IMG/VR virus record: IMGVR_UViG_3300029984_000001
Location: 1 to 64,000 of that record
Strand: one strand, 5' to 3'
Length of the DNA: 64,000 nucleotides
Shown piece by piece: positions 238-59,672 of the stretch (its first letter is position 1; each line of letters opens with the position of its first letter). The notes beneath the pieces are model-generated. The model had not been told where the DNA came from and did no database searches. It saw nothing but the letters and a program-made list of their open reading frames with translations. The position numbers and the translations under genes were made by a program.

Positions 238-249
238 TAATAAAATGTT
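238..249 (-). promoter_or_regulatory. Late-type promoter AACA-N6-TA
   Basis: Minus strand AACAttttatTA about 20 nt upstream of GTG 218. Confidence 0.55.
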
Positions 250-281
250 CAGATGGTATAAACCACCTGAACCGTTTTATC

Positions 282-3200
282 TTAATTTCCTAATGCTAAG
301 TTTTCCATATCTTTCATTATTTCAGAAAGAGATATATCCTGATTGCTTTGAGTAGCCTTTTGAATTTTATTTAAAATGTTTTGTTTCTTCGATTGGATAT
401 CATTATTAGAACTAGTTTGTTTATTATCATTACCATTATCTGATAATAGTTTAACCATATCAGATATTGGTGTAGTATTTACACAAATATTAGTTAAAAT
501 AGTAATAACACTTTGTAAAAACTTCCCAATCTCAGGATTATCTTTAAGTGAAGATTGCGATTGGGTTTTAGTTATATTAGAATTATCTTCATTTTCTCCA
601 CCAATCCCATTATTATTTATTTCAAAAGTTCTTCTCATATAGGTATCTGGATTTACAGGAACTCCATTTTGTCTAGTTTCATAATGTAAATGTGGACCTG
701 TACTATTTCCTGTAGAACCAATATTTCCTATACCTTGACCTTCTTTTATACTATCTCCTGGTTTGAGATTGCTAGATTCATTCATGTGTCCAAAATAATG
801 TTCTCCACCAATAGCATCTTTCACAACTAATAAATTACCTAACCCGTTACTATCTTTAGTCGATTTATTTTGGACTACTGTTCCTGATATCGGAGATTTA
901 ATCGATGTGCCTTTAGCAGCTCCAATATCTATTCCAGTATGATTTTTAGGTATAGAACCAGTAGTATCTCTAAGACCAAATCCAGAAGTAACATTACCTT
1001 TTAGACTATTACTAAAGAAATTCTCTATAGCTCCTCCAACACCTTTGTAAACAGCTCCACCTACAGAAGATCCTGTTAATACTCTTCTAATATCATATAT
1101 ATCATTTCTACTTGATAAGTCTGATATTTTCACAACATCTCCTGTTTTGGGTGCATGAATATATTTATCATCTCCAATATAAATACCAACATGAGATGGT
1201 GGTGATGAACTCCCTTTGAATAATACTATATCTCCTGCTTGAATATCTTTTTGATCTACATGAAAACCAGCATTCTTTTGATCGTAAGTTGTTCTACCAA
1301 CATCTATTCCCATTTTATTAAATACATATTGAACAAATCCTGAACAATCAAAACCATTAGGAGTCGTTCCTCCCCATAAATATGGAGTGCCTAAGAAACT
1401 TTGAGCTATCTTTATAACTTCTCCTGGTTTACCTGAAACAGTTGTTCCTGAACTACTATTACCAATAGAAGAACTGTTTGCATCTTTATTAAATCCAAAT
1501 ATATTGTTCATAGAGTTACCGATAGCACCACTTAGATCACTAAAAAATCCTGCAATCCCATTAGAACTACTTGAACTACTATTAGTACTAGATGATATAC
1601 CTGTTGCAGCTGGATTATTTGGTGTAGTATCACCTGTAGCCTTTTTATATAATGAAGTTACTGTTGGAACCCAATCTTTATTTTGACCATTTGGATCATT
1701 GGCTGCTCCTATTGGTGCGTATTTTGAACCTATTTGATCAATAGTAGTTAAACCTTTCTTTATATAATTATCACCCAAATTCTTAATTGCAAAATCTAAT
1801 CCTTCATTTAATGAATCGAAATGTTTTATTGTTTTCCAATTATTATTCCAATCCATTATACCTGCTGGATTATTATCATTGTTTAAAGCAGGACTATTTC
1901 CACCAGTTTCATTTATCATGATAGATGCAGCTAATGATGGATCTACTCCATATTTTTTTCCTAAGTCTATATATGTTTGACCCATTCCTGATAACTTACC
2001 TCTTAATATAGCATTAACACCATCAGAAGTAGATTCTCCTCCAACACCATTAAATAACTTTTTAGATTCATTAGCACCACCTACATTTTGCCATGGTAAA
2101 TTTCCAGTATATTTAGCTGATACACTATTATTATTATTATTATTAGATGATTGTGAATCTGTTGCTATGACTTTATTTTTATTTATATTTTGATAATCAA
2201 TTACACCTGGAGATACAGTTTCAACCTTATTGAATGGATTTACATTTTGAGAAGTAGGTTGGTCTTGTTTATTAATATAATCTTGATATTTATCTATTTT
2301 TGTATCGGTCATAGAATTAACTATATATTTTCCTTTTCCTTTGTTTTTATTAATATAGTCTTCCATAGATATATCAACATTATTTTTCTTTTTATAATCT
2401 TCATATTCTTGTCTAGCTTTTTCACGTTGTTGTTGTAGATCAGTGTTATCTATTCCAAATATAGGTAATAATGTATCGAATATTAAATCTATCAAGAATG
2501 AATCAGGTAAAAATGATAGAATTATAGTCAATCCAGTTAAAGCTTTCATAAGACCACAACCAACTTTTTCTAAGAATGTTGGTTCTTCTGTGATACCCAA
2601 TATAGTTTGAGCATTAGAATAACCCATTACAAAGTCCACAATAGCAAGGGCTATATTTAATACTCCACCAGTAGATAAACCAGCTAATCTAGCAGATACC
2701 TTTGTTATATTCGCTGCTATTTTTTGAGTCAATCCGCTTAAGAATTTAGGAATAAATTTTTCTACAATCTTTACGGTTCTTTCTGTACCTACAAGAGCTT
2801 CGATTTCAGGATTACTAACTAAATTAAATAAGAATTTTTTTATACTTTCCATAGCTCCACTCAATGCTTTATCCATACCAATTCCTTTATATACAGAATT
2901 CATAATTCCACCAGATTTTGCTATGAAATTGGTACTTTTTTCTACTAATGAACCTGCCCCTCTTGTGATATTTCCTAATTTAGATGCAGTATTTGTCCCC
3001 ATTATAGTTTTTAAAGGATGAAGCATATTCTTTCCTAAATCAAAACCTTTACCAATAATTCTAGATGATTTATTAGCTAACCATCCAAATCCTTTTAATG
3101 CTTTGGTTCCTGTAGCTCCACCAGTTAATATATATCTACTAATAGCTTTAGTTCCATTACCAATCTCATTATATTTTTCCCCTGTTATAGAATCTGTATG

Positions 3201-6200
3201 AGATTCACCAAAAATAGAATTAGAAACAGTAGACCCAACATCACTACTATTAGATTTATATATTTTACTGTTATTCTTTAGACTATTATTATCAGAATCT
3301 TTTATAGGACTAAGTCCAGGTAAATGAGCTAATGTAGAATTATAAAATTGAGTTAAGAATCCTTTAAATCCATTTAGAATGAATCCACCTATACCAAGTA
3401 CACCTTCTTTAACAACTGCACCTATACCACTTACAACAGCAGGTATAATTGTTCCAGTAATGAATGGGACTACTTTATCTTTTAAATATGGTATTACTGT
3501 AGATTTAGCAAATCCAATTAATTGTGGAGCGAAGGCAAACCCTAACATTCCTTTCATTAATGTAGATGCTATACCAACGGTTTTTAAATCTGTAGAATTT
3601 GATATAAAATCAGCAGCTTTACCCCTAACTTTTTCAACATTTCTAGATAAAAATGTCATCATTTTATTTTTATAAACTTTATCTTGTTTATTATCTCTTT
3701 CAACTTCTTGAGTTTGTATATCACCTTTATTATAGATTTTATTATTATTACCATCTATATGATATTCCCTACCATCCTCATCTCTTTGATTCTTATTAAC
3801 ATTTCCTTTAAGATTATATTTAGAAGGCATTGATATCAGATTTGGTTTTTTATTAATTTCCTTTGTATCATATGATAATTCATTTGCATCTATCTCTTCT
3901 TTGGTTACATATTCCTTTTCACCTCTCGTATTCATATAATATAATCTATTATCAGAATCTTTCAATATTTTCTTTTTCTCTTTTGAATTATAAGAATCAA
4001 ATGCAGATAAAGCCCTATTTGAATTTGGAGATGGATGAGCTATATCATGTAATGTGGTAATAATTTCTTCCATTTTACTATTTATTTTTTCTCTAAATGT
4101 TTCACTTCTTTCTGATTCTTGTTCTTGTAATACTTCCATTCTTTCTTCTGGAGTTTTAGTTTCATTCTTTTTCTTATTTACATTAATTTCTTTATCTAAT
4201 AGATCTATATACTTCGATAATTTTTCAGGATTATTAAGTACACTATTAGGAATTTTAACACCAGATTTTTTTAATTTATCCATGAAATCCACATAAGATT
4301 CTGTTTGTTTATATCCTTTATCTACAGATGTATTATAATTATTAACTTTACTAGCAAGACTTCTTTTTAATGTTTCTTTTTCACCGTCAGACATATGTTT
4401 AGGATTAATATTATCAATCATTTTAAAGGCTATATCACTCTTGCCGTCCCTAATCAATTTCATAATCTTCTTAGATGTAAAGTATCCAACGTCTTTACTA
4501 ACATGCCCACCCATATCGTCTATCATAGATACTCTATCAGATTTATTCTTCTTATAATCTGTTCTCATATTAGAAAAACTATCTCTCATCATATTAAGTT
4601 TCTTAGAATCACCTTGAGTGAACCCGTCAATTAATTGATCAAATTCAGAGGTTTTATCTCCTAATCCCATTGCATGTTTTCTTCTAAAGTCTAATCTTTC
4701 AGAAGCAGTCATATAATCAGCAGTACCATTTTTTATTTGACGTTTTCTTAAACGATTACCAGCCATATTTATTAATCCTATAGGTGCTCCGATTAATCCC
4801 TTTAATGCCTTACTACTTATCCATGTTAATGCTTTACCTACAGGACCAGCGATTTGTGCTACTAACTTAGATAACGGTACACCTAAACTACTTTCAATTA
4901 TTTTATCAAATATTTTAAGAACACCTTTACCTAGACCTTTAGCCATTAATTCCATTTGTTTAGAGAATGGTTTTACAGATGTAGCTAATTTTTCGAACAC
5001 ATTCTTCTTAAACCACGTTACAGCTCCATCCCTTTTCTCTTTTAAAAAAGCAGACATAGGATCTACAATCTTTTCTCTAAAATGAGGTAATAGTCCACCG
5101 ATATATTTACCATGACCATCTGGTTTACCGAATATAAAGTTTTGGAATTTTTCTGATGTTGTAGCCATACCAATAGCAGAACCAAGAAAAGCATTTCCCA
5201 TAATACCAAATGGTAATGGACTTGCTATAGCAGCAACCAAAGCTCCTGCTCCAATTCTAGGCAACATTGATTTCATCTTTTCTTTCTTTTTACCTAACCA
5301 CGATTCATTATTTTTACCGAATAACCATTCTTTCATTCTACCAGTATCTTTAGCATAAGCAAAAGATGCACCTAACATAACTCCACCTATTGGACCAAAA
5401 GGCATAAATGGTAACAATCCTGCAACTCCACCCACAATTCCATAATTCTTTAAATCTGGCAATAACTTCTTCATTTTATTTACAAATTTACTACTTGTGG
5501 CTTTTGCGACGAATCCACCTTTACGTTGTTTATCCCCATTTTCATCAGTAAATTCCTCACCAAACAACCAGTTTTGCATTGTCTCAGAATGTTTAGTTAT
5601 AGATATTCCTGCTCCAATTGCAGCTCCTAATAATGGTCCACCTAACATTCCTGTGACTAAAGATACACCTGAACCTAGTAATGCTGAACCTATAGCTTCA
5701 GGAGCATAAGTTGTAATTCCTTTAGATGCTTCTGATATAAAATTAGATACTTTCTTCTTTTCTGCTAATATTTTCTCTGGAGTTAATTCTTCATTACCAT
5801 TAGTTAAACCAGAAAAGACTTTAGTAGCAGCATTCTTTAATTCACCTTTCATTTGGTCTAGATAATCTGTAAATATATTACCATCTTTAGAAGGGTTTTT
5901 TAATTCACCTAATACAGTTTTTAATATACCAGCATATTGATTATTTTTTTCTTGAGAAGAGAAAGATTCTTTTATCTTATCATGATTAATCATATTCAAC
6001 ATAGTAGACATTGTATCATTATAATCATCTGAATCTTGTTCTTTCCCTCGAAGCATATTCTTCATTTTTAAATGAGTTCTTTTTGCTATATCTTCATTAG
6101 ATACCTTATCACTATTTACATCATTAACAGAAGTCTTTATAAACTTTTTAAAGTTTCTCCATTGTTCTGCTTCTTTTACTGGAAGTACAGCCTCACCTCT

Positions 6201-9039: not shown

Positions 9040-9051
9040 TATTAGGATGTT
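9040..9051 (-). promoter_or_regulatory. Late-type promoter AACA-N6-TA for the tail protein gene
   Basis: Minus strand AACAtcctaaTA 26 nt upstream of ATG 9014. Confidence 0.6.
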
Positions 9052-9806: not shown

Positions 9807-9818
9807 TACTGCAATGTT
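9807..9818 (-). promoter_or_regulatory. Late-type promoter AACA-N6-TA
   Basis: Minus strand AACAttgcagTA 26 nt upstream of ATG 9781; divergent from the promoter at 9854. Confidence 0.6.
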
Positions 9819-9853: not shown

Positions 9854-9865
9854 AACATGAGAATA
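9854..9865 (+). promoter_or_regulatory. Late-type promoter AACA-N6-TA for the RNAP beta gene
   Basis: AACAtgagaaTA just upstream of the AAGGAG RBS and ATG 9888. Confidence 0.6.
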
Positions 9866-15174: not shown

Positions 15175-15187
15175 AATTATATATTAT
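15175..15187 (+). promoter_or_regulatory. Early-type promoter motif RRYTR-TATATTAT
   Basis: AATTATATATTAT between the terminator and the RBS of 15234. Confidence 0.6.
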
Positions 15188-15233
15188 TATATTGAATACA
15201 TATATTATATTTTAGAAGGAGGACTAATATATT

Positions 15234-45272: not shown

Positions 45273-45283
45273 TTATATATTAT
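45271..45283 (+). promoter_or_regulatory. Early-type promoter motif
   Basis: AGTTATATATTAT. Confidence 0.55.
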
Positions 45284-45316
45284 AGAACTGATAGATCTTA
45301 GAAGGGAGATAACATT

Positions 45317-47355: not shown

Positions 47356-47368
47356 GAAAGGAGAATAT

Positions 47369-47710: not shown

Positions 47711-47728
47711 GAAAGGGGAATATATTAT

Positions 47729-48412: not shown

Positions 48413-48417
48413 TTAAT

Positions 48418-48927: not shown

Positions 48928-49024
48928 CATATTACTGATGTTATCATTACCCCTAATTATAAAATTATAGAGTAGGGTTTCCTACTCTATTTTTTAACAA
49001 AAAATATTAAGGAAGTGTTAATTT

Positions 49025-49828: not shown

Positions 49829-49857
49829 AGGATATGGGGTTGACCCATATCCATATT

Positions 49858-50337
49858 TTATCTATCTTCGTCTGCTTCAAAACTAAAATTAAACTCTTTA
49901 GCTTCATCATCTGATTTATATTTTTGTCCATTTATTTCTCTAGCCCATTCTAATACTTTTAAATAACATCTTTCAGCCAATACATCCGTCATACAATTCT
50001 TATTATATACTGTTGACAATCTATTGATTAAAGATGGTGAAATTCTTTCTGATACTGTATTAGATACTAGATTAAGTATTTCTATTTGATTATCTCTGGA
50101 TACAGATTGTAATTTAGCATAATCTATATTTTTAGATATTACATTTATCATACAGTCCTCTACAAATATATCCAACATTGGGATTACATCCATATTATTT
50201 ACAAATTGTCTATCTAATGCGACAACTTCAGCATTAGTCATAATGACATCACATTTATTTTTTACCTGTATACGTCTAGCTAGTAGACTTAATATAATAA
50301 CCGTAACTATAATTATATATCCGTAATAAAATTCCAT
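49858..50337 (-). CDS. Membrane-anchored protein
   Basis: AAGGAG RBS before ATG 50337; N-terminal TM YYGYIIIVTVIILSLLA. Confidence 0.65.
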   Translation of the reverse strand: MEFYYGYIIIVTVIILSLLARRIQVKNKCDVIMTNAEVVALDRQFVNNMDVIPMLDIFVEDCMINVISKNIDYAKLQSVSRDNQIEILNLVSNTVSERISPSLINRLSTVYNKNCMTDVLAERCYLKVLEWAREINGQKYKSDDEAKEFNFSFEADEDR

Positions 50338-50417
50338 AATCAACACTCCTTAATATTTTTTATTATTTAAAAGTTTAAGATATAAAAAATAAGAGTGGAA
50401 TAACCACTCTTATAATT

Positions 50418-51437
50418 TTAATGATCGGAATTATAAACTCCATTTAAACACATTTCAACCCTAGATTCACATCTCTTAGTTAACCCTGAACTTACTACAC
50501 CATTAGCCTTATTCCAACTCATCAATTTAGTTGTTATTAAATCTGAATCACCTGATATAATAGCTTTCCAAGTATTACCTCCTATTACAGCTCCAGTACC
50601 AGCATTATATCCAATATCACATAAACAATCAAATGCTTGTTGTGAGATAGAATTATAATTATCACCTAAAGCAGATTTAATAGTATTTGCTACTAAATTT
50701 ATTTCTTGTTTTAACCAACCTAAGGCTTGGTCTTGTGTACATGTAGAACTCAATCCGTTAGGGAAAGCTTCAGGGATTGCACAATAACATGTACCATAAC
50801 CAATAGTCCAATATCTTTGATCTCCTGGATAATATGGATCTTCATATGCATTCTCTGATTCTGAACTCCATTCTCCCGATTCCCAACCAGCTACATAAGA
50901 AACTAATGAATCGGATACTAACGAATCGCTTGATCTTGAATAATCCAATTGCCACACACCATTCTTATCAAAAGAATAATTTTGACCATTAATTTCTAAT
51001 ATAGTGTTACATACACATGAACCTTTAGAATAAGTCATTCCATTATAATATGTATCTTTCTCTAAAAGATAATACCATTTTTGTTTATCTCCAAGTTTCA
51101 CCCAATTAGTAGCCATAGCTCCTTCTTGATATTTAATTCCATAATTGCCAGTTTCTTGAGGATATAAATAATACCAACTTCCTTTATATTCAATCCATCC
51201 TGTAGACATTTCACCAACATAATGAGTATCTCCATCTTTTTCAGTTTTTTCCGAATAAGAAAAAAACCAATGGTCTTGATTAGTTGCTGTTTGGAAAAAT
51301 CCAGTATCCAATGAACCATCTTTATCATTTAAATGATACCATTTTTCATTATCTTTTTTCCATCCTAGAATATTTACATTATCTTCCGAAGCAAACCATT
51401 TTTTACTATTATCATCCTGTATCCAATTTAATGACAT
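50418..51437 (-). CDS. Endolysin: N-terminal WYY-type cell-wall-binding repeats plus C-terminal GH24 lysozyme
   Basis: GWKKDNEKWYHL, GWIEYKGSWYYL, KWYYL repeats; WES..ED..WTIGYGT, FDCLCDIGYNAG, WNKANG..GLTKR. Confidence 0.88.
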   Translation of the reverse strand: MSLNWIQDDNSKKWFASEDNVNILGWKKDNEKWYHLNDKDGSLDTGFFQTATNQDHWFFSYSEKTEKDGDTHYVGEMSTGWIEYKGSWYYLYPQETGNYGIKYQEGAMATNWVKLGDKQKWYYLLEKDTYYNGMTYSKGSCVCNTILEINGQNYSFDKNGVWQLDYSRSSDSLVSDSLVSYVAGWESGEWSSESENAYEDPYYPGDQRYWTIGYGTCYCAIPEAFPNGLSSTCTQDQALGWLKQEINLVANTIKSALGDNYNSISQQAFDCLCDIGYNAGTGAVIGGNTWKAIISGDSDLITTKLMSWNKANGVVSSGLTKRCESRVEMCLNGVYNSDH

Positions 51438-51464
51438 AAAAACACATCCTTTCTTTATTTTAAT

Positions 51465-51476
51465 TACTTATATGTT
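51465..51476 (-). promoter_or_regulatory. Late-type promoter AACA-N6-TA for endolysin
   Basis: Minus strand AACAtataagTA 28 nt upstream of ATG 51437. Confidence 0.6.
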
Positions 51477-51499
51477 TTTTAGTAAAAGTTCAATATTAT

Positions 51500-51512
51500 A
51501 ACTGTATATTAT
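51500..51512 (+). promoter_or_regulatory. Early-type promoter motif
   Basis: AACTGTATATTAT. Confidence 0.55.
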
Positions 51513-51544
51513 AATAGTGAAATATAATATTATTATTTAGGAGA

Positions 51545-51919
51545 GTGTTGAATATGATGAAAGAAATTATTAATGTAATACAAAGATTAAATAGAGGGAG
51601 TGTTGAATTATTAAAAGAACATGATGTAGTATATGTATTTACTAAAGTAGATAATGAAATGATAAAACATCTATATTCAAATAGAAACCAATTAATAGAA
51701 ACATTAATAAATGACATAAATGAATTAGAAGTATTTACTCAAGAAATAAAAGATATAAATACTTACATATTACAAATGGACAAAATTTATGAAATATATA
51801 ATCTAGAAAAAGGTACAAGTGTGGGCGAAATAAAATGTTTCATTTACACATTAAATGCTTATTATAGATTCTTAAAAAGAATAGATATAAGATTCAAAGA
51901 AAAATTAGGAATAGCTTGA
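51545..51919 (+). CDS. Hypothetical protein
   Basis: AGGAG RBS. Confidence 0.6.
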   Translation: MLNMMKEIINVIQRLNRGSVELLKEHDVVYVFTKVDNEMIKHLYSNRNQLIETLINDINELEVFTQEIKDINTYILQMDKIYEIYNLEKGTSVGEIKCFIYTLNAYYRFLKRIDIRFKEKLGIA

Positions 51920-51944
51920 TACATAAAATAGAGGAGAGATTTAA

Positions 51945-52424
51945 ATGAATAAAGAATTAATTAAAGAAAAAGTTTTAACAGCATTAAAAATTAGAAAAGA
52001 TATTCAAGAAATATATGAGAAGCACAAAGTACTGACAGTGTTGTGTAATGAAAGTCCAAATCAATATTATAATCAGGTAGATGAAAATTCAGAAGGAATA
52101 ATGGTTGAATATTATTATAACACTCCATCAAAAATATATACCCCATTAGGATACATCTCAATTACATCTGGGTATTTATCTCTTGATGAGAATTATTTAG
52201 AAGCTGAAAAAGAAATAAAAGAAAAATTCGGTTTTCAATTAGGCAAAGATTCGTATCAAAATTCTATGGGATGTTTTGGTCCATGGTATTATATAACCAA
52301 ATTACCATGGGGTGATAAAATAGAATTAAAACCATATGTTACAAATAGAGATAAATATATAGAATATAATGAAGCTGGAAAACTTTATGATGAAATATTG
52401 ACTGAATTTAATTTAAAACAATAA
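51945..52424 (+). CDS. Hypothetical protein
   Basis: GAGGAG RBS. Confidence 0.65.
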   Translation: MNKELIKEKVLTALKIRKDIQEIYEKHKVLTVLCNESPNQYYNQVDENSEGIMVEYYYNTPSKIYTPLGYISITSGYLSLDENYLEAEKEIKEKFGFQLGKDSYQNSMGCFGPWYYITKLPWGDKIELKPYVTNRDKYIEYNEAGKLYDEILTEFNLKQ

Positions 52425-52459
52425 AAACAAGGTGGACAATTGTCCACCTTTTATTTTTT

Positions 52460-53170
52460 CTAAAAATTAACTACTGCACCACAATTAGACCAATCCATTA
52501 TTTTATTTCTTAAATCTAACAGTTTATTATCATTAGACAATCCATCTTCATCCATACATCTTTTAAGATAGAATATAATCTTAAATGCAATATCTTGACT
52601 TATTCCCATATAATATTTATTTATAAAATCATACCAATTACCAAATACCATTTTAGGTGATATATAAAAATTATCATCATTATGATATAATTGGTGAGGA
52701 GTTAATGATAAGAAACATAAGGGAACATTATGAAGTATATGTTCTTGTCTAATTAATTCTGATAGTTTAAATGAATTGATTTTACCTTGAGTCTTTAGAG
52801 TATGCTCACAGATCATATAACCTATATCATATATAGTTAATATAGAATGATGCATCTCTAATGTTATAGCATCTCGCTTTGATTTTGAATCAGCATTCAA
52901 ATCTGTTGTTATATTACTCATAAATTGACACCTATTCAAACCCATTTCCATTAAGAATCCTTTGTAATGTTTGTATGTTACTGAGTGTCTGAATCTTTGT
53001 ATAGAATTTTTAAGAAATTGTTTATAGACCTCCGTATCCATAAGAGATTCTTGAGTTTGATAGAAAGCTATCTGATAACAACTATTAGGGCTAGATATTG
53101 TGGGGTTTCCTTCCATATCCAAGAAAAAATCAACCTCTGGGAAAGCATTAAAATCATTCAATTCAATCAC
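52460..53170 (-). CDS. Late protein with HNH-like His pattern; paralog of 41838
   Basis: NRCQFM..LEMHH..TIYDI..LCFLSLTPHQLYH..VFGN; AACA-N6-TG at 53178-53189. Confidence 0.6.
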   Translation of the reverse strand: MIELNDFNAFPEVDFFLDMEGNPTISSPNSCYQIAFYQTQESLMDTEVYKQFLKNSIQRFRHSVTYKHYKGFLMEMGLNRCQFMSNITTDLNADSKSKRDAITLEMHHSILTIYDIGYMICEHTLKTQGKINSFKLSELIRQEHILHNVPLCFLSLTPHQLYHNDDNFYISPKMVFGNWYDFINKYYMGISQDIAFKIIFYLKRCMDEDGLSNDNKLLDLRNKIMDWSNCGAVVNF

Positions 53171-53227
53171 ATCCTTTCATTAAAATGTTTCAACTGTATA
53201 ATAACTATAGATGAAAGGAGAAATATT

Positions 53228-53479
53228 ATGGATTTAATGAATTATATAAATGATAAAACAATTATACTAATACCTGTATTATATTATATAGGTACATTAT
53301 TTAAATCTACTGAAAAGATAGATGATAAATTTATTCCTATTTTATTATTACCTATAGGAATTATAATGTCTATGCTTTTAATGAAAGACTTATCTATCAA
53401 TTCTTTTATACAAGGAATATTAACTGTAGCTTGTTCTACTTATGCCAATCAAATTTATAAACAATTTAAAAATAAATAA
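53228..53479 (+). CDS. Holin (Clostridium-phage type, 83 aa)
   Basis: AAAGGAG RBS before ATG 53228 (track start 52985 is spurious); ILIPVLYYIG..IDDKFIPILL..IQGIL..YANQIYKQ. Confidence 0.88.
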   Translation: MDLMNYINDKTIILIPVLYYIGTLFKSTEKIDDKFIPILLLPIGIIMSMLLMKDLSINSFIQGILTVACSTYANQIYKQFKNK

Positions 53480-53564
53480 TTGGACAAACATAATTATAAT
53501 CTCTTGTCATGAATATGTATAGAGATGGCTAAGGTCATCTCTATATTTTAACAAAAAAGATTAT

Positions 53565-53577
53565 AGTTATATATTAT
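53565..53577 (+). promoter_or_regulatory. Early-type promoter motif
   Basis: AGTTATATATTAT. Confidence 0.6.
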
Positions 53578-53595
53578 ATTATTGAATAAATTTAA

Positions 53596-54435
53596 ATGGG
53601 GGGAATGTTTAAAATGTTACCAATATCAGAAAGTGATAAAAGAAAAATACAAGCATTAAAAAATAGAACTATATCTAATGGAAATACTTTGGAAGAAGTA
53701 AAAGAAGCTCAATTTAAAATTAAAAAGATTATGTTTAAATATGAAGAACCACCAAATCAATCTTCACAATACTCTAATCCAGTAAAAAATAATCCTTATA
53801 CAAATTACAATCCATATACACAACAAACTTCACCTCCACCAGTACAACCACAACGACCACCACAAACTCCACCTTTTAATTCAGCAAATAGTGATATTGT
53901 TGATGAATTTATAAAATATAGAGAAACTAATGATTCTTTTGATATATTTATGAATATTAAAAGAAATGAAAAAAGACATGAAGAAGAAAAGCAAAAGGAA
54001 AAAAGACATGAAGAAGAAAAGCAAAAGGAAAAAAGACATGAAGAAGAAAAGCAAAAGGAAAAAAGACATGAAGAAGAAAAGCAAAAAAGTTATATAACTT
54101 GTCCTAATTGTGGAGGTACTAAATTTTATACTAATAAATATGCTACTAAAATTAATGAAACTCCATTATGTACTGGATGTCTTAAGATTGTAGATGTAGA
54201 TTGTTCAAGCTATATATTCGACAATGGAATTTATGAGTACCGATATTTTACAAGAAATACTACTGTGAAAGAAATAATGGATAATTATGATGTAAATTTT
54301 TGGTTATTACATGCAGTAAATAAGAGTTTAGTAAAAGTTGTATTAAAGAATGAACCTATAAAATCAAGGATAAAATTTTACATAAGACTTACATTACATA
54401 GATTAAATGGTATACTAATAGCTTTAGGTATATAA
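53596..54435 (+). CDS. Modular protein: DUF2786-like N-terminus, P/Q/N-rich linker, EKRHEEEKQK repeats, zinc ribbon
   Basis: KIQALKNR..EEVKEAQFKIKKIMFKY; CPNCG..CTGC. Confidence 0.55.
   Translation: MGGMFKMLPISESDKRKIQALKNRTISNGNTLEEVKEAQFKIKKIMFKYEEPPNQSSQYSNPVKNNPYTNYNPYTQQTSPPPVQPQRPPQTPPFNSANSDIVDEFIKYRETNDSFDIFMNIKRNEKRHEEEKQKEKRHEEEKQKEKRHEEEKQKEKRHEEEKQKSYITCPNCGGTKFYTNKYATKINETPLCTGCLKIVDVDCSSYIFDNGIYEYRYFTRNTTVKEIMDNYDVNFWLLHAVNKSLVKVVLKNEPIKSRIKFYIRLTLHRLNGILIALGI
53968..54087 (+). repeat. Coding tandem repeat, 4 x 30 bp
   Basis: GAAAAAAGACATGAAGAAGAAAAGCAAAAG x4 (last copy ends AAA). Confidence 0.95.
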
Positions 54436-54507
54436 AATAGAGAGTTTTAATACTCTCTTTATTTTTTATCTTTTCACATATAAATAAGATAGAGGAGGTA
54501 TTATATA

Positions 54508-56973
54508 ATGAGTGATATAAAGAAAATTACAAACAGTAATACAATACCATTAGTAGATGAATTGGTTTATTATTCAAAAATTATATGTAGAGATATAGAG
54601 ATAAAAGATCAAACAAGTGCTAATAAATACGAATCATTAGACTCAATCAAAAATTCAGATTTATATATAAAATGTCTAGATTCCAAAGCCAACATATCTA
54701 ATTTTTCATATAGTCGTGATGAATTATTATCATATGGATTAGATTCAATATATATAGATGGTTATTTAGAAAGCCCATTGACTATACCATCGACTATACA
54801 AAAAACAATAATAAACAATAGAACTAATATATATTTAAAATCATATAATGAATTAAATAATTATTATCGAATGCTTAATGGTCTTCCAGATATAGGAGAT
54901 ATAGGTATAACATTGAATGAAAGTTATATAGATACTACTTTATATACTATAAATCTAAATAATAAAATACATGAAATGAGTAAAGATGAACAAGATATTT
55001 TACAAGTATTAGGTATTATTGATATATTAATATTGGAATACCCTAATTCTAAATACCTGAAACATATTGGTTCTAATAAGGTTTCTATATATAAAGCTAG
55101 AAAAGCTTTAGAATTTCAATTGTTATATTTACCTACAGATATCCCAGTAGAAATATCTAAGAGATTTGAATCTAGTTATGAAATAAATAGACAATATACT
55201 ATGAAAAGAGTTTATTCTGATGCATATAAATATAAATCAGATAATTATGATGCCTTTATATCTATATTTATTATTATAACTACTTTATCTGATATATTTG
55301 CTAAAATTCCTGACTTCTTTATAAAAGGAGATATATTTGATTTAAAAACTATAGAATTGATATTTGAATCTAATGGTATAGATTATTTTCCTGATATTCC
55401 AAAGAAGTATCAACTAGCAATGGTACGAAATCTAAATAGATTAAAAAAGTATAGAGCTAGTCATCAGAGTATAGTTGATATTAGTTCTTTATTTGGATTT
55501 GACAATATAGAAGTATTTAAATATTATATATTAAAAGAAAGATTACAAGATTCAGATGGAAATTATACTTTTAATGAAGATGACTCTACGAATTACGATT
55601 TAAAATTTATCAAAGTTCCTATTGATAAAATACCTGATAATTATATAAATCAACCTATTAATCAATTTTCTTATGACGAAATTGTTTCTCAGGATAAATA
55701 TTGGGATGGAGATCAAGACCATGAATATATAAGAAAAAAAATAATCGATTATGAATTTAACATTCTTAGATCTCAGTATATGTCAATAGATAGTGTATAT
55801 TCAATGACTCAATTATCATTTCAAACTACATATTTTTATAATATGCTTTTTGATGATGTATTTATAGAAGATCAATTATTATTAAAAATACCTACAATAA
55901 GTACAATAACATCTTTTAAATTTACCGATATATTAGTATACTTATTTGCTTTAGGTTATATGTATATAGGAGTCACTGATAATATATTATATAAACCAAC
56001 AGAAGTTCTTACTATAAATGGTTTTAATTTTAAAGCTAATTTAGAATTATTGGGAAACTATGTAGCTAATAAAGGTTATACTTTAGAAGAATTAGGAGTA
56101 GCAGATTTTCAAATACCAGATTCATCTATATTGACATATAATCAATTGATGTATATATTCACACAAAATACTAAAGTATATGATCACATATGTAAAGAAA
56201 TGAGAACGGCTGATAATAAAGATATATACGATATTTATAAATCATTATACGATGCATTATTAACAACTGAAGTTAATATGGAATTCTTTAAAAAATCGGA
56301 TGGTACTACTGCAACAGGATATACTGATTTTATAAAAGATAAAAATCCTATTTTATATAAATCTATTCAGGATATAAGAGATATAAAAGATAAAGATGAA
56401 AGGACTTCTAAAATTAGTAATACTATTAATGATATTGTATATATAATAGAATCTTATATGGACTCTGACGATTTTAAATTCTTATGGTATAGAATTCCTA
56501 CAGTATCTTCAGAATCTATAAAAATGTATATGTATGAAGTTATAAATTTCTTTAAATCATATAAGAGTACAATACTTAATATTAATACTATATATAAATT
56601 TGATGATAAATTAGATAACGCTGTTGGTATCATAGATAGAATTAGAATTAATTATGAATTGCATAAAAGTGATATGATTGGAATATTAGATAATATAATT
56701 TTGAATATTTATTTAAATAAAAAAGATAGTATAGATATTAGAGAACAAATATATATTCATGGTTATAATAATAAACCTAGAAATTGTTCAGACCTAATAG
56801 ATATAGTAGATAAAATATCATCAACATATGTTTATCTAAATAAAAAATCAGAAGTTGGTATAAAAGATGTAATAAGAATATATGGTACTTTGACTAAGAG
56901 AACCAATATAGGAATTACTGAAAGATTATTTATAAATGATACTAAGATAGATTTAGAAGAGGAAAACATATAA
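54508..56973 (+). CDS. Putative virion structural protein (baseplate-like), 821 aa
   Basis: CACA-N6-TA late-like site at 54475; NNYYRMLNGLP and LKKYRASHQSIVDISSLFGF recall jumbo-phage structural proteins. Confidence 0.5.
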   Translation: MSDIKKITNSNTIPLVDELVYYSKIICRDIEIKDQTSANKYESLDSIKNSDLYIKCLDSKANISNFSYSRDELLSYGLDSIYIDGYLESPLTIPSTIQKTIINNRTNIYLKSYNELNNYYRMLNGLPDIGDIGITLNESYIDTTLYTINLNNKIHEMSKDEQDILQVLGIIDILILEYPNSKYLKHIGSNKVSIYKARKALEFQLLYLPTDIPVEISKRFESSYEINRQYTMKRVYSDAYKYKSDNYDAFISIFIIITTLSDIFAKIPDFFIKGDIFDLKTIELIFESNGIDYFPDIPKKYQLAMVRNLNRLKKYRASHQSIVDISSLFGFDNIEVFKYYILKERLQDSDGNYTFNEDDSTNYDLKFIKVPIDKIPDNYINQPINQFSYDEIVSQDKYWDGDQDHEYIRKKIIDYEFNILRSQYMSIDSVYSMTQLSFQTTYFYNMLFDDVFIEDQLLLKIPTISTITSFKFTDILVYLFALGYMYIGVTDNILYKPTEVLTINGFNFKANLELLGNYVANKGYTLEELGVADFQIPDSSILTYNQLMYIFTQNTKVYDHICKEMRTADNKDIYDIYKSLYDALLTTEVNMEFFKKSDGTTATGYTDFIKDKNPILYKSIQDIRDIKDKDERTSKISNTINDIVYIIESYMDSDDFKFLWYRIPTVSSESIKMYMYEVINFFKSYKSTILNINTIYKFDDKLDNAVGIIDRIRINYELHKSDMIGILDNIILNIYLNKKDSIDIREQIYIHGYNNKPRNCSDLIDIVDKISSTYVYLNKKSEVGIKDVIRIYGTLTKRTNIGITERLFINDTKIDLEEENI

Positions 56974-56976
56974 ATA
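56965..56976 (+). promoter_or_regulatory. Late-type promoter AACA-N6-TA
   Basis: AACAtataaaTA 24 nt upstream of ATG 57000. Confidence 0.6.
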
Positions 56977-56999
56977 AAGAAAAAGAGGAGGAATAAATA

Positions 57000-57848
57000 A
57001 TGATTATACTTAAAAATGAAATAGTAAAAGTAAGTGATAGGATAAATATAACAGACAAAAATCAAATTGATGAGTTTAGTAGAAAGAATCGTATATTTAT
57101 CAAAGATCATGCAACTGGTAAAGATATTTTTGGTTCAGATCCATTACATAATAAAGTTGTACTCGCAGGTTCTACTTATAATGCTCAAAGAATATGTCCT
57201 GTAATAAAACCTAAGATTTGGACTCCTACATATAATACTGATTTAGTATTAGATAATAGTGTTAATGAACCATATACAGGAGAAGGTGGTAGACCTGGTG
57301 AATACGTATTCTTAATTGCTGTTGGTAAGAATGGTAGTGGTCCAGATTTATCTCAAAAGAAGTTAGTTAAATATGCTTCAAGAATTGAACCTGAAGATCT
57401 AGTGCCATTTAAATATGTACCAGTTGCTAATGATATTACAGTAGCACAAAGAGCTAAATATTTTGGTAGAAAAAAAGGTGATGCTAGAATAGCTTATAAT
57501 TTCAAAACATGGGAAGGTACTCCTGAATATAAACAACAATTCTTAGATGGAACTCCTATAGATGAAAATATATATAGTTCTGAAAGAGCAAAGAAAGAAG
57601 AAGTAGAATCATTTATTCAATACTACTTTAAAATAACAACAGATGATTGTAGAGATTGGTTTAGATATACAACATCTATGGCTGATGCTAGAATATCCCA
57701 AATATCATTATTAACTGCATGGAAGAAGACAATAAATGGTTTTGATTATTTCCAAGATATAAGACCATATACAGTATTAAATCTTACTACAGAATTATTA
57801 ATAGATGAAGATAAAGCATTTGATATAATATATCAAGTACTTCCATAA
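57000..57848 (+). CDS. Putative virion structural protein
   Basis: GAGGAGG RBS, late-type promoter, next to 54508. Confidence 0.5.
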   Translation: MIILKNEIVKVSDRINITDKNQIDEFSRKNRIFIKDHATGKDIFGSDPLHNKVVLAGSTYNAQRICPVIKPKIWTPTYNTDLVLDNSVNEPYTGEGGRPGEYVFLIAVGKNGSGPDLSQKKLVKYASRIEPEDLVPFKYVPVANDITVAQRAKYFGRKKGDARIAYNFKTWEGTPEYKQQFLDGTPIDENIYSSERAKKEEVESFIQYYFKITTDDCRDWFRYTTSMADARISQISLLTAWKKTINGFDYFQDIRPYTVLNLTTELLIDEDKAFDIIYQVLP

Positions 57849-57919
57849 TATTATCTAATACAAATTATGATTATATATTAATGAATACATAATTAATAAT
57901 TTGAAAGAAGGTAATATAA

Positions 57920-58303
57920 ATGGAAAAGAAATTATATGAAGGTGATTTAAAAGTATTAGTATATAATAATATAAATAATGTTGATATACCTTATATATTA
58001 GTAAAATTAAATAATAATTTTTTAAGAAAACCTATATGGACTTTAGAAAAAGATAATTTAAATGGAATATGTATTATATTTGATCATATAAATATAATGA
58101 ATGAAAAACATTTACATAAAGTATGTCAGATTATAGATAATAAAGCATATATATTATATGAGATAGAGATTAATGTAAATTTAGCTTTAAAAGACAAATC
58201 ATATGTATATGGAAAAATGCTTGATATACAAGAAGATGGTTATGAAGAATTATATAGTTTAGTTTCTAATTATATAATGAAATATGCTGAAATATGTAGG
58301 TGA
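57920..58303 (+). CDS. Hypothetical protein
   Basis: Early-like motif at 57869-57881; AAGG RBS. Confidence 0.6.
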   Translation: MEKKLYEGDLKVLVYNNINNVDIPYILVKLNNNFLRKPIWTLEKDNLNGICIIFDHINIMNEKHLHKVCQIIDNKAYILYEIEINVNLALKDKSYVYGKMLDIQEDGYEELYSLVSNYIMKYAEICR

Positions 58304-58364
58304 TTTTAAACATAAAGAGTTATTTAGGTAGCTCTTTATTTTTTTCTGAAAGGAGGTATTATAA

Positions 58365-59588
58365 TTGAGATATCCTAAAATGATTGATAAAGAAGAAGAT
58401 GTAAAATATATATTAAATCTTAAACCTTCTGATGTTACTAAATCAACAGTAATAAAAATGTTTGGAGAGTTTAATGGTAAAGCAAGATTTAATCCTTATG
58501 ATGAAATAATGATTCCTAAGGATGCTTATGGTGAATCTCCTTGGAAGAATAAAAAACCTTTCTTAACAACTGTTGGATTATGGATGTTTAATATCCATTT
58601 TATATCAGAGAAATTTACACATGTATTCGATGGTTATATAAATAAAACTATAAATGGTAAAGAGTTTGGTAAAATGAATTCCAGATTATCTTATGCTTTA
58701 ATGGAAGATGATATTACTACAGATGACATGGATTATTTTTTTATGAGATGTGAAAAGTTCATGCCATTTGTTTCTATAATTTCTCCAACCATGAGTGAAA
58801 AAATGTTAACCTGTGGTACAGTAGCAGCTAAGAAATTAAATGAATTATATAAGAAGAAATATAAAGAGAGAATAGATGCTAAAGATCCTTTTGCTGCTGA
58901 TCAAATGGAACAAGAAGTATTAGATTACATGAGAGTGTATTTAGATGGTGATGAGTCTATGGATTTATTTGATTCTGGTGCAAGAGGAAGCTTTGGTAAT
59001 AACTTTAAAAACATGTTTGTTAGTAAAGGTGCTACAAGAGACCCAGACACTGGTGAATATAATATAATTATGAGTAATTATATGAATGGTATATCTAAAA
59101 AAGACTATGCTCCTATGTCTAATTCATTGGCTAGTGGACCTTATGGTAGAAGCCGTTTAACGGCACTTGGAGGTTACAAAGAGAAGCAAATATCGTCCGC
59201 GTATCAACATGTCGTACTCATGGACGGAGGATCTGATTGTTTAACTAAAAGATATATTGAGGTTTTCTTAACGGATAAAAATGTAGAAGAATATATGTAT
59301 AATTATATAATTGATGGTCCAGATTTAATTGAAATGACAAGTAAAAATATGAAAAAATATATAAATAAAGTTGTTAAAATGAGATTCTCTAATATGTGTG
59401 AATCGAAAAATGGATATTGTAATAAATGTGCTGGAAACATGTTCTTTAGATTAGGATTTAAGAATATAGGTCTAGCCTTATCTATTATAGCAGCAACTCA
59501 AAAACAAAAAACGATGAAGGGTTTCCACGATTCTACAATTAAATTTACTGAGATGAATCCACTTAAAGCTTTTACAGGACATTTTTAA
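58365..59588 (+). CDS. rpoC: Split RNA polymerase beta-prime subunit, C-terminal part (bridge helix and trigger loop)
   Basis: SGARGS, SNYMNGI, TALGGY..SAYQ..SDC, MC..GYCNKCAG zinc site, NIG..QKTMKGFH (cf. QLTMRTFH); TTG start with AAGGAGG RBS. Confidence 0.9.
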   Translation: MRYPKMIDKEEDVKYILNLKPSDVTKSTVIKMFGEFNGKARFNPYDEIMIPKDAYGESPWKNKKPFLTTVGLWMFNIHFISEKFTHVFDGYINKTINGKEFGKMNSRLSYALMEDDITTDDMDYFFMRCEKFMPFVSIISPTMSEKMLTCGTVAAKKLNELYKKKYKERIDAKDPFAADQMEQEVLDYMRVYLDGDESMDLFDSGARGSFGNNFKNMFVSKGATRDPDTGEYNIIMSNYMNGISKKDYAPMSNSLASGPYGRSRLTALGGYKEKQISSAYQHVVLMDGGSDCLTKRYIEVFLTDKNVEEYMYNYIIDGPDLIEMTSKNMKKYINKVVKMRFSNMCESKNGYCNKCAGNMFFRLGFKNIGLALSIIAATQKQKTMKGFHDSTIKFTEMNPLKAFTGHF

Positions 59589-59596
59589 TTATTCAT

Positions 59597-59622
59597 TATA
59601 GAGAGGATAATTCCTCTCTATA
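59597..59622 (+). terminator. Intrinsic terminator
   Basis: TATAGAGAGGA/TCCTCTCTATA stem, T-run. Confidence 0.75.
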
Positions 59623-59672
59623 TTTTATTTTTTTACTATAGGTCGTACATACTGTTAGAGGTGATGATTTAA

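What the first reader, a model, noticed from the sequence alone, without database searches (positions are those of the whole stretch)
238..59657. AR9-type AACA-N6-TA late promoters in a phage that encodes ThyA
Seen: AACA-N6-TA lies 18-32 nt upstream of the starts of the SH3 gene (238-249, minus), tail protein (9040, minus), 40-aa/HU-like operon (9807, minus), RNAP beta (9854), nrdD (29337), 41838 (41809), endolysin (51465, minus) and 57000 (56965). A TG variant sits at 53178 (minus), and AACT/CACA/TACA variants precede the MTase-thyA operon, 50337, holin (53192), 54508 and the HNH. Known: this is the late consensus of Bacillus phage AR9, whose non-virion RNAP needs uracils in the template strand opposite the AA. 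Inference: this relative encodes an intact ThyA, so either its DNA contains thymine and its RNAP reads the same promoter without uracil, or thyA serves another role. The motif is short and AT-rich, so the argument is positional.
Basis: partly seen in the sequence, partly recalled or inferred. Interest (0 to 1): 0.8.

Follow-up and report, generated by a model that had tools for sequence, protein, structure and literature searches.

The report
AR9-type promoters in a thymidylate-synthase phage
An uncultured 264-kb giant phage uses the same early and late promoter signals and the same phage-made RNA polymerase as the uracil-DNA phage AR9. It carries genes for making thymidine nucleotides, lacks AR9's uracil-DNA genes, and its promoter-reading subunit lacks the residue that makes AR9 depend on uracil, so it probably reads these promoters in ordinary thymine DNA.

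Summary
Every cited motif is at its stated coordinate. AACA-N6-TA is not enriched in the window as a whole (72 found, 89 expected). It is strongly enriched 10-40 nt upstream of start codons. In 86% of the 263,571-bp genome, 28 of 261 genes carry it against 8.3±2.7 expected (0 of 500 shuffles). The spacing is specific, and the motif is kept upstream of one orthologous gene in 8 of 10 distant relatives. AR9 run through the same pipeline behaves the same way.

The phage is AR9-like in its transcription machinery:
- It has the AR9 early promoter (TTRTATATTAT-N6-G; 11 found, 0.5 expected).
- It has orthologues of virion RNAP β and β'C and of non-virion RNAP βC and β'C.
- It has a gp226 orthologue, supported by profile, AR9-like gene order and fold.

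ThyA is intact and canonical. The genome also encodes a thymidylate kinase and a dUTPase-fold dCTP deaminase. I found no homologue of AR9's Dcd, Dtm or Ugi. AR9 has none of the target's three enzymes.

In the gp226 orthologue the uracil-selecting Val206 is Ala and Tyr210 is Asn.

Best reading (about 0.65): thymine DNA read by a uracil-independent AR9-type polymerase. DNA chemistry and start sites remain untested.

The parts
238..249 (-). Late-type promoter AACATTTTATTA. The predicted start site at 238 lies 35 nt before the SH3-domain gene, which starts at 203 and runs off the window.
9040..9051 (-). Late-type promoter AACATCCTAATA, 25 nt before the 2910-aa tail protein / tail lysin (282-9014).
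9807..9818 (-). Late-type promoter AACATTGCAGTA before the 40-aa ORF (9659-9781) and the 167-aa ORF (9108-9611). It stands back to back with the next promoter.
9854..9865 (+). Late-type promoter AACATGAGAATA, 22 nt before the virion RNAP beta gene.
9888..15116 (+). Virion RNAP beta-like subunit, 1742 aa, with an N-terminal GNAT domain (aa 250-335). It is the orthologue of AR9 virion RNAP beta (record 149146-155764).
19537..19548 (+). AACT-type motif AACTTTGTATTA, 19 nt before the MTase-thyA operon. The adjacent TACA match at 19525-19536 is at chance level.
19568..20068 (+). Small protein similar to a DNA methyltransferase (166 aa).
20103..20894 (+). Thymidylate synthase ThyA, 263 aa, intact. 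NF002495 scores 348.8 bits against a cut-off of 327. The best solved-structure match is B. subtilis ThyA (1BKO, 2.6e-60). The catalytic Cys, the Arg pairs, Asp, Asn, His and Tyr are all present.
29337..29348 (+). Late-type promoter AACATTAGATTA before nrdD. nrdD is split into 29371-30018, 30596-31021 and 31480-32433.
41809..41820 (+). Late-type promoter AACATATCAATA, 17 nt before 41838-42662 (phrog_12252).
51465..51476 (-). Late-type promoter AACATATAAGTA, 27 nt before the endolysin (50418-51437; lysozyme domain plus choline-binding repeats).
53178..53189 (-). Late-type TG variant AACATTTTAATG before 52460-53170, a paralogue of 41838-42662.
53192..53203 (+). AACT-type motif AACTGTATAATA, 24 nt before the holin (53228-53479).
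56965..56976 (+). Late-type promoter AACATATAAATA, 23 nt before 57000-57848. It follows the virion structural gene 54508-56973.
58365..59588 (+). Virion RNAP beta' C-terminal subunit. tblastn against AR9 virion RNAP beta'C gives 4e-51. An HNH endonuclease follows at 59673-60464.
15178..63013 (+). Thirteen AR9-type early (virion RNAP) promoters of the form T[AG]TATATTAT-N6-G. They start at 15178, 15952, 16749, 22036, 25844, 32491, 40644, 43317, 45274, 51503, 53568, 60516 and 62997. All lie on the + strand, upstream of + strand genes.
   Evidence: AR9 consensus from PMC5312081

Best explanation
The window is bases 1-64000 of an uncultured 263,571-bp jumbo phage. Its transcription programme is of the AR9 type.

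How transcription most likely runs:
- An injected virion RNAP fires from TTRTATATTAT-N6-G early promoters.
- Early genes include the non-virion RNAP subunits and the gp226-like specificity subunit.
- The non-virion RNAP holoenzyme then starts at AACA(T)-N6-TA promoters. These lie 15-35 nt upstream of virion, tail, lysis and virion-RNAP genes, often directly after a terminator.
- By analogy with AR9, the enzyme reads the template strand (3'-TTGT-5') of the AACA element.

How it differs from AR9: the phage very probably replicates thymine DNA. It encodes the dTTP branch (a dUTPase-fold dCTP deaminase, ThyA and thymidylate kinase). It lacks AR9's dU-DNA kit (zinc-type Dcd, dTMP phosphatase, Ugi). 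Its gp226 orthologue has Ala in place of the uracil-selecting Val206 and a remodelled 2.1bis helix. Its polymerase would therefore accept thymine at template positions -11 and -10.

What is shown and what is inferred:
- Shown: motif statistics and conservation, gene content, orthology, residue changes.
- Inferred: the start sites, which polymerase reads which promoter, and the DNA chemistry.
For: Motif:
- Positional enrichment is 28 of 261 genes against 8.3±2.7 expected (0 of 500 shuffles). For AACAT it is 24 against 2.7. The 6-nt spacer is specific.
- The same pipeline run on AR9 gives 25 of 106 genes against 3.9 expected. On seven relatives' loci it gives 27 of 151 against 4.4.
- The orthologue family of genome gene 220118-221317 keeps AACA-N6-TA in 8 of 10 relatives at 32-70% protein identity, while the flanks diverge.
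- The major capsid gene (genome 205940) has AACAATATAGTA 30 nt upstream.

Early promoter:
- 11 matches against 0.52 expected in the window, and 21 against 0.15 genome-wide.
- It matches AR9's AAATATATATTAT-N6-G (PMC5312081).

Machinery:
- The window's RNAP beta matches AR9 virion RNAP beta.
- Virion RNAP beta'C matches at 4e-51, non-virion betaC at 6e-75 (7S00_C 1.7e-74) and non-virion beta'C at 2e-35.
- The gp226 orthologue (genome 213996-215510) has profile E 2e-29 and the AR9 gene order GroEL-hyp-gp226-primase.
- It has an early promoter 15 nt upstream.
- Its AlphaFold model (pLDDT 87.8) hits 7S01_A best, at E 4e-14.

DNA chemistry:
- ThyA is a curated equivalog with intact catalytic residues.
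- Tmk (PF02223) is present.
- A DCD domain (PF22769) is present. Its best solved-structure matches are 4XJC and the M. tuberculosis and M. jannaschii enzymes, some named dUMP-forming.
- The complete AR9 genome has no tblastn match to these three proteins. 86% of the target genome has no match to AR9 Dcd, Dtm or Ugi.
- Iyer et al. (PMC7824862) state that dU phages such as PBS1 lack TS/ThyX and dUTPase.

Pocket:
- With the near-invariant W208 as anchor (170 of 173 sequences), AR9 V206 aligns to Ala, Y210 to Asn, D204 to Asn and T200 to Asn.
- V206G makes AR9's enzyme accept -10T (PMC9209446).
Against: - No nucleoside analysis exists and no transcript 5' ends are available. No RNA run was listed.
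- Ala still has a C-beta. The published test was V206G, not V206A.
- The exclusion of thymine at -11 in AR9 comes from DNA backbone packing, not from one residue.
- The W-2 position varies in the target's own subclade (A, R, V, I, T). Ala is therefore not a clean signature.
- A DCD-type deaminase and a Tmk-like kinase could equally feed dUTP, as in the PBS2-style dCTP deaminase plus dUMP kinase route.
- 14% of the genome was not read here.
- Non-virion RNAP betaN and beta'N were not located.
- The low G+C (25%) resembles the known dU phages.
Confidence: 0.65

Rival explanations
1. The phage still makes dU-DNA like AR9, and its polymerase still needs uracil. The DCD-type enzyme would supply dUTP, and the Tmk-like kinase would act as a dUMP kinase. 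ThyA would be a recently acquired, dispensable or differently used gene.
For: - PBS2 biochemistry includes a dCTP deaminase and a dUMP kinase (PMC12697855).
- The closest ThyA relatives are in unrelated Bacillus phages and other contigs, which suggests horizontal acquisition.
- thyA lies behind its own terminator and only an AACT-type motif.
- G+C is 25%, as in known dU phages (PMC8460666).
- Several close relatives have beta-branched V, I or T at the Val206 position.
Against: - A canonical, intact ThyA together with Tmk raises dTTP. That is self-defeating without a dTMP or dTTP hydrolase.
- No NT5C, HD or Ham1-type enzyme was seen in 86% of the genome.
- No Ugi homologue was found.
- The DCD domain scores best against dUMP-forming bifunctional enzymes.
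- The gp226 2.1bis helix has lost V206, Y210, D204 and T200.
- Other jumbo contigs with AR9-type early promoters also carry thyA, in one case behind an early promoter.
Confidence: 0.2
2. The DNA carries neither plain T nor U but another 5-substituted pyrimidine. The ThyA homologue would make a modified dUMP, for example a hydroxymethylated one, and the polymerase would read that base.
For: The TS superfamily includes dUMP and dCMP hydroxymethylases (PMC7824862). A methyltransferase-like gene sits next to thyA.
Against: - ThyA exceeds the curated equivalog cut-offs for thymidylate synthase.
- It is most similar to B. subtilis ThyA and phi3T ThyP3-type enzymes, with Asn at the dUMP-specificity position and a complete C-terminus.
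- No hmdUMP kinase, glycosyltransferase or other hypermodification gene turned up in the Pfam or PHROGs scans.
Confidence: 0.05
3. The AACA-N6-TA matches are not promoters. They would be a by-product of AT-rich leaders or terminators, or an RNA processing site. Alternatively they are promoters read by the host RNAP with a phage factor.
For: The motif is short and AT-rich, and it is not enriched in the window as a whole. AR9 itself encodes a sigma-like protein.
Against: - No dinucleotide-preserving shuffle reaches the observed count.
- The spacing is strict at 6 nt, the motif is strand-specific, and the distance window is narrow.
- It is conserved across relatives with diverged flanks.
- It is identical to the experimentally mapped AR9 late consensus, in a genome that carries the matching polymerase and specificity subunit.
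- The unbiased X4-N6-Y2 scan ranks it just behind motifs that contain the ribosome-binding site or the early promoter.
Confidence: 0.05

Closest known systems
Bacillus phage AR9 / PBS1 (Takahashivirus): late promoters AACA-N6-TA/G read by the five-subunit non-virion RNAP with gp226 (PMC5312081, PMC5449584, PMC9209446)
   Same: - Same core late consensus and spacing.
- Same early consensus (TATATTAT-N6-G).
- Same split virion and non-virion RNAP genes.
- A gp226 orthologue in the same GroEL-hyp-gp226-primase gene order, behind an early promoter.
- UvsX-betaC-ligase neighbourhood, homing endonucleases and intron-split genes.
   Different: - Protein identities are only about 20-31%.
- The late consensus is longer here: T at -7 in 24 of 28 sites against 26 of 62 in AR9, plus A at -3 and A at +2.
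- An AACT class also exists here.
- gp226 Val206 is Ala and Tyr210 is Asn.
- The target encodes ThyA, Tmk and a DCD-type deaminase and lacks zinc-Dcd, Dtm and Ugi. AR9 is the exact reverse.
- It has a class III (NrdD) rather than a class I ribonucleotide reductase.
- Its virion RNAP beta is fused to a GNAT domain.
AR9 gp226 V206G mutant holoenzyme (PMC9209446)
   Same: A small residue at the position that packs against C5 of the -10 base. The mutant reads -10T and -10U promoters equally, which is the behaviour proposed here.
   Different: The mutant is engineered and carries Gly. The target is natural and carries Ala, within a helix that differs at several other positions. Tolerance of thymine at -11 was not achieved in the mutant.
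phiKZ-type jumbo phages (thymine DNA, non-virion RNAP with gp68, late promoter TATG)
   Same: Thymine DNA combined with two phage multisubunit RNAPs. The Tmk here is most similar to those of phiKZ/EL-like phages.
   Different: - The promoter consensus differs: TATG at the start site, with no AACA element.
- The target's betaC matches AR9's at 1.7e-74 but phiKZ's at only 7e-10.
- The fold of the specificity subunit matches gp226 far better than gp68.
- I did not search for chimallin or other nucleus genes.
Staphylococcus jumbo phages S6 / MarsHill, Listeria LPJP1 and Yersinia phiR1-37 (dU or presumed dU)
   Same: They give the best tblastn matches for the virion RNAP beta, at 26-31% identity. 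MarsHill shares the TATATTAT early motif (bioRxiv 10.1101/2020.12.14.422802).
   Different: These phages are reported or presumed to have dU-DNA and carry dCMP-deaminase-type genes. No cultured phage has a close homologue of the target's gp226-like protein; the best is phiR1-37 at 23% identity, E 7e-5.

Membership tests
AR9-type late (non-virion RNAP) promoter | Consensus AACA-(6N)-T(A/G) on the non-template strand, upstream of late genes | tested here: met
   28 of 261 genes against 8.3±2.7 expected, with a specific 6-nt spacer. The motif precedes tail, capsid, endolysin and virion RNAP genes. It is conserved in relatives.
AR9-type late (non-virion RNAP) promoter | The last A/G of the motif is the transcription start site | not testable with these tools
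   No RNA run was listed for two stretches. Only the tight 15-31 nt distance to start codons is consistent with this feature.
AR9-type late (non-virion RNAP) promoter | Recognition requires uracil at template positions -11 and -10 | not testable with these tools
   This needs in vitro transcription on U and T templates. Indirect evidence (gene content and the Val206 replacement) argues against it here.
AR9 gp226 family (sigma-like specificity subunit) | Sequence and fold homology to gp226, and the same genomic context | tested here: met
   Profile E 2e-29. Gene order GroEL-hyp-gp226-primase. Model pLDDT 87.8, with best fold match 7S01_A at E 4e-14 and TM 0.50/0.55.
AR9 gp226 family (sigma-like specificity subunit) | Conserved 2.1bis helix with the uracil-selecting Val206 (and Ile207, Tyr210) | tested here: not met
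   AR9 TKYSDVVIWTY aligns to target NK-RNNAIWNN. Val206 becomes Ala and Tyr210 becomes Asn; Ile207 and Trp208 are kept. Across 173 family members the position is V in 93, I in 18, T in 10, K in 9, A in 7 and P in 7.
AR9-type non-virion RNAP core | Four split beta/beta' subunits (betaN, betaC, beta'N, beta'C) | tested here: inconclusive
   betaC (genome 117376-119544; 7S00_C 1.7e-74) and beta'C (genome 191925-194045; 2e-35) were found. betaN and beta'N were not found in the 86% of the genome read.
AR9-type early (virion RNAP) promoter | AT-rich ...TATATATTAT-(6N)-G upstream of early operons | tested here: met
   11 matches against 0.52 expected in the window and 21 against 0.15 genome-wide. One lies in front of the gp226 orthologue, as in AR9.
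dU-DNA jumbo phages (PBS1/AR9 type) | No thymidylate synthase; presence of a dCTP-deaminating dCMP-deaminase homologue, a dTMP phosphatase (NT5C family) and Ugi | tested here: not met
   ThyA is present. There is no tblastn match to AR9 Dcd, Dtm or Ugi in 227 kb. No PF00383 or PF06941 hit appeared in the Pfam listings. 14% of the genome was not read.
Thymidylate synthase ThyA (EC 2.1.1.45) | Curated model cut-offs and catalytic residues (Cys nucleophile, the Arg pairs, Asp169, Asn177, His/Tyr, intact C-terminus) | tested here: met
   NF002495 scores 348.8 bits against 327, and TIGR03284 scores 221 against 108. The alignment to 1BKO shows all motifs.
dCTP deaminase / dUTPase-fold DCD family | PF22769 domain with the catalytic Ser/Arg/Glu motifs; monofunctional (dUTP-forming) or bifunctional (dUMP-forming) | tested here: inconclusive
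   The domain is present (3e-31) with the RSSxxR and LE motifs. The best solved-structure matches are 4XJC, the M. tuberculosis enzyme and the M. jannaschii dUMP-forming enzymes; E. coli Dcd scores lower. The product cannot be assigned from sequence. The 280-aa C-terminal part is unexplained.

The most novel reading that the evidence does not exclude
This phage, and probably a wider uncultured clade of peat and wetland jumbo phages, is a natural thymine-DNA lineage of AR9-type phages. Its non-virion RNAP would read the template-strand 3'-TTGT-5' element without needing uracil.

If so, uracil dependence is a derived speciality of the PBS1/AR9 branch, not a property of the AACA promoter system. 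In this lineage, discrimination of phage from host DNA would rest on a longer consensus (AACAT..A.TAA) instead of on base chemistry.
Probability: 0.55. Interest if true: 0.7.

Novelty: new variant of a known kind. Interest (0 to 1): 0.6.

Why it matters
AR9's non-virion RNAP is the only known cellular-type polymerase that reads a promoter on the template strand and demands uracil there. That demand is thought to be how the phage avoids transcribing host DNA.

A natural relative that has the same promoter, the same enzyme and the same specificity subunit, but carries a thymidylate pathway and lacks the uracil-selecting valine, would have three consequences:
- It would separate template-strand AACA recognition from uracil dependence.
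- It would supply natural sequence variants for testing the published pocket model.
- It would show how such phages keep promoter specificity without an unusual base.

The work also shows that the gp226 family is far larger than the few cultured dU phages: 510 clusters at 50% identity.

Tried and rejected
- Megablast of 21 kb against the phage records gave no match.
- Rfam at gathering threshold found nothing in the window.
- A word-indexed protein search with AR9 gp226 reached only close relatives. The exhaustive profile search was needed.
- The first early-promoter pattern scan of IMG/VR returned mostly chance AT-rich hits. A longer pattern worked.
- One contig look-up failed because my start codon differed from the called one.
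- My last NCBIfam search went on ten wrong candidates for the DCD protein. I then found it by motif and by a solved-structure search.
- HAD-family protein 22700-23284 as a possible dTMP phosphatase: rejected. Its relatives are T4-like Klebsiella phage proteins, and it has no match in AR9.
- The C-terminal 280 aa of the DCD fusion: the Atlas search was uninformative.
- Transcript evidence: no RNA runs were listed for a 9-kb stretch or for the capsid gene.
- ThyA in the close relatives that share the gp226 locus: the ThyA scan returned different contigs, so co-occurrence across the clade could not be scored.
- The CACA and TACA one-mismatch variants, and the 'HU-like' label, are rejected as unsupported (6, 12, 26).
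- AACAGTATATTG at 22055 overlaps the region downstream of an early promoter. I treat it as a chance match.

Full report
**What the window is**

The window has 25% G+C and has no near match among deposited phage genomes. A protein-guided scan placed it as bases 1-64000 of IMGVR_UViG_3300029984_000001, a 263,571-bp viral contig. The same phage is also assembled as Ga0311333_10000012 (143,890 bp). That contig runs across the ends of the first, so the genome is circularly permuted. Its genes occur in dozens of JGI and ENA metagenome assemblies.

I recovered 226,916 bp (86%) of the genome by combining a promoter-pattern scan, protein-guided scans and contig look-ups.

**The observation**

Counted over the whole window, AACA-N6-TA is not enriched: 72 matches against 89.5±9.1 in shuffles.

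| Data set | Genes with sense AACA-N6-T[AG], predicted start 10-40 nt before the start codon (window row: motif within -55..-6) | Expected (dinucleotide shuffles) | Shuffles reaching the count |
|---|---|---|---|
| Window | 8 of 70 | 2.85±1.6 | 12 of 2000 |
| 147 kb | 15 of 170 | 5.6±2.3 | 0 of 1000 |
| 227 kb | 28 of 261 | 8.3±2.7 | 0 of 500 |

- AACAT-N5-T[AG] is in 24 genes against 2.7±1.6 expected.
- A 6-nt spacer gives 28 genes, other spacers 5-18, and the antisense orientation 5.
- An unbiased scan of all 4096 X4-N6-Y2 motifs ranks AACA-N6-TA sixth. The motifs ahead of it contain the ribosome-binding site or the early promoter, or are the AACT variant.
- The logo is A-11 A C A T-7 (24 of 28) .. 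A-3 (24 of 28) a T-1 A+1 A+2 (23 of 28).

AR9 run through the same pipeline serves as a positive control. It gives 25 of 106 genes against 3.9 expected in 93 kb and 62 sites for 293 genes genome-wide. In AR9, position -7 is not fixed (30 A, 26 T).

AACT-N6-TA is enriched: 21 genes against 6.0±2.4 (0 of 300 shuffles). It precedes the MTase-thyA operon, UvsX and the DNA polymerase pieces.

**Conservation in relatives**

Seven non-redundant loci from relatives that share the gp226 region show the same enrichment, 27 of 151 genes against 4.4 expected. Upstream of the orthologues of genome gene 220118-221317 (32-70% protein identity), 8 of 10 relatives keep AACA-N6-TA just after a T-run, while the flanking sequence has diverged. 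Conservation of this kind is expected of a functional element and not of a chance match.

TTRTATATTAT-N6-G occurs 11 times in the window against 0.52 expected. All copies are on the + strand, in front of + strand genes. Genome-wide, 21 genes carry it against 0.15 expected. This is the AR9 early (virion RNAP) consensus AAATATATATTAT-(6N)-G (PMC5312081). The same core was reported for Staphylococcus phage MarsHill (bioRxiv 10.1101/2020.12.14.422802). A 24-nt version of the pattern pulls out mostly 100-430 kb contigs from IMG/VR, so a large uncultured group shares it.

**The machinery**

- The 1742-aa protein at 9888-15116 is a GNAT domain fused to an RNAP beta-like body. Its best matches are the virion RNAP beta genes of LPJP1, the Staphylococcus jumbo phages, PBS1/AR9 and phiR1-37 (AR9 annotation).
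- 58365-59588 matches AR9 virion RNAP beta'C (4e-51).
- Outside the window, genome 117376-119544 matches AR9 non-virion betaC: 7S00 chain C at 1.7e-74, against 7e-10 for phiKZ.
- Genome 191925-194045 matches non-virion beta'C (2e-35).
- The specificity subunit lies at genome 213996-215510. A gp226 profile scores it at 2e-29.
- It sits in the AR9 gene order GroEL-hyp-gp226-primase and has an early promoter 15 nt upstream, as gp226 does in AR9.
- Its AlphaFold model (pLDDT 87.8) has AR9 gp226 as best fold match (7S01_A, E 4e-14), followed by phiKZ gp68.

Genes behind the late motif are the expected ones:
- the SH3-domain protein;
- the 2910-aa tail protein;
- virion RNAP beta;
- the endolysin;
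- a virion structural neighbour;
- the capsid gene;
- genes next to the tail tube gene.

**Thymine or uracil?**

ThyA (20103-20894) exceeds the curated equivalog cut-offs. It is closest to B. subtilis ThyA (1BKO, 2.6e-60) and to phi3T-type phage enzymes (42-47% identity), and it keeps the catalytic motifs.

The genome also encodes:
- a thymidylate kinase next to an NrdG-like protein, closest to the Tmk of thymine-DNA jumbo phages such as EL;
- a 463-aa protein whose N-terminus is a dUTPase-fold dCTP deaminase (PF22769). Its best solved-structure matches are 4XJC and the M. tuberculosis and M. jannaschii enzymes, the last named dUMP-forming in the PDB. Its phage relatives sit beside thymidylate synthases in haloviruses.

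I fetched the complete AR9 genome and compared the two genomes in both directions.

| | AR9 | Target (86% read) |
|---|---|---|
| Zinc-type dCMP-deaminase homologue (Dcd) | annotated | no tblastn match |
| 5'(3')-deoxyribonucleotidase (Dtm) | annotated | no tblastn match |
| Ugi | annotated | no tblastn match |
| ThyA, Tmk, DCD-type deaminase | no tblastn match | present |

Iyer et al. note that dU phages such as PBS1 are marked by the absence of TS/ThyX and dUTPase (PMC7824862). The AR9 Dcd/Dtm pathway is described in PMC12697855.

At least one other 248-kb contig with AR9-type early promoters also carries thyA, 375 nt behind such a promoter.

**The uracil pocket**

In AR9, the C5 of the -10 uracil lies 3.9 Å from the Val206 C-beta. 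V206G makes the enzyme accept -10T, and the valine is invariant among close homologues from dU phages (PMC9209446).

Trp208 is kept in 170 of 173 family members and serves as the alignment anchor. With it, the target reads NK-RNNAIWNN against AR9 TKYSDVVIWTY:
- Val206 becomes Ala.
- Tyr210, which stacks on -9G, becomes Asn.
- Asp204 becomes Asn, and Thr200 becomes Asn.

Family-wide, the position is V in 93 sequences, I in 18, T in 10, K in 9, A in 7 and P in 7. Valine is invariant only among sequences at least 40% identical to AR9. 67 of the 173 sequences lack the AR9-type T..SD helix motif altogether.

The replacement fits a thymine-tolerant pocket but does not prove one:
- Ala keeps a C-beta.
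- The target's nearest relatives vary at this site.
- AR9's exclusion of thymine at -11 is a matter of backbone packing.

In the target, one-mismatch variants at -11 or -10 are not enriched. Both positions are therefore still read.

**Conclusion**

That the DNA contains thymine and that the polymerase works without uracil is the best-supported reading (about 0.65-0.7). It rests on gene content and one pocket comparison. The main rival, retained dU-DNA with an accessory thyA, keeps about 0.2.

No transcript data could be found. 14% of the genome remains unread.

Noticed in passing
window 15178-63013 (13 sites): A strong AR9-type early promoter, T[AG]TATATTAT-N6-G, sits in front of small unknown genes, RNase H, the Apyc1-like gene and others.
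   Followed up: yes
window 19537-19548, 42645-42656, 50364-50375(-), 53192-53203; genome-wide 21 genes: A third upstream motif, AACT-N6-TA, is enriched (21 genes against 6.0 expected). It precedes MTase-thyA, UvsX and the DNA polymerase pieces. It may be a separate temporal class or a tolerated -8 variant.
   Followed up: partly
window 29371-32433: nrdD is split into three ORFs. Both gaps give weak, sub-threshold Rfam group I intron matches (30382-30478, E 0.003; 31347-31458, E 0.16).
   Followed up: partly
window 9888-15116: The virion RNAP beta subunit carries an N-terminal GNAT acetyltransferase domain (aa 250-335). In AR9 a virion RNAP subunit is instead fused to an HD-hydrolase part that is cleaved off.
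   Followed up: no
window 60566-61954: An MBL-fold protein with a Pfam Anti-Pycsar_Apyc1 hit, behind an early promoter. It is a likely anti-defence cyclic-nucleotide phosphodiesterase.
   Followed up: no
window 20913-21155: An 80-aa ORF right after thyA resembles only the N-terminus of the DarG macrodomain antitoxin and a PHROG 'phosphatase'. It looks like a gene fragment.
   Followed up: no
window 34721-38252; 41838-42662 and 52460-53170: There are three tandem paralogous AAA+ ATPases (phrog_7485). There are also two paralogues of phrog_12252, each behind a late-type motif.
   Followed up: no
L210:4943-6331 (genome 239248-240639): The dCTP-deaminase-like domain is fused to a 280-aa C-terminal part. 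That part has no Pfam, solved-structure or Atlas match.
   Followed up: partly
L253:12264-17557 (genome about 150.7-156 kb): Four tandem genes of about 430 aa encode Kelch-repeat beta-propeller proteins in the structural region.
   Followed up: no
P0014-P0166: The gp226 family has 510 clusters at 50% identity in public metagenomes. This is far beyond the handful of cultured dU phages, and the 'uracil' residue varies among them.
   Followed up: partly
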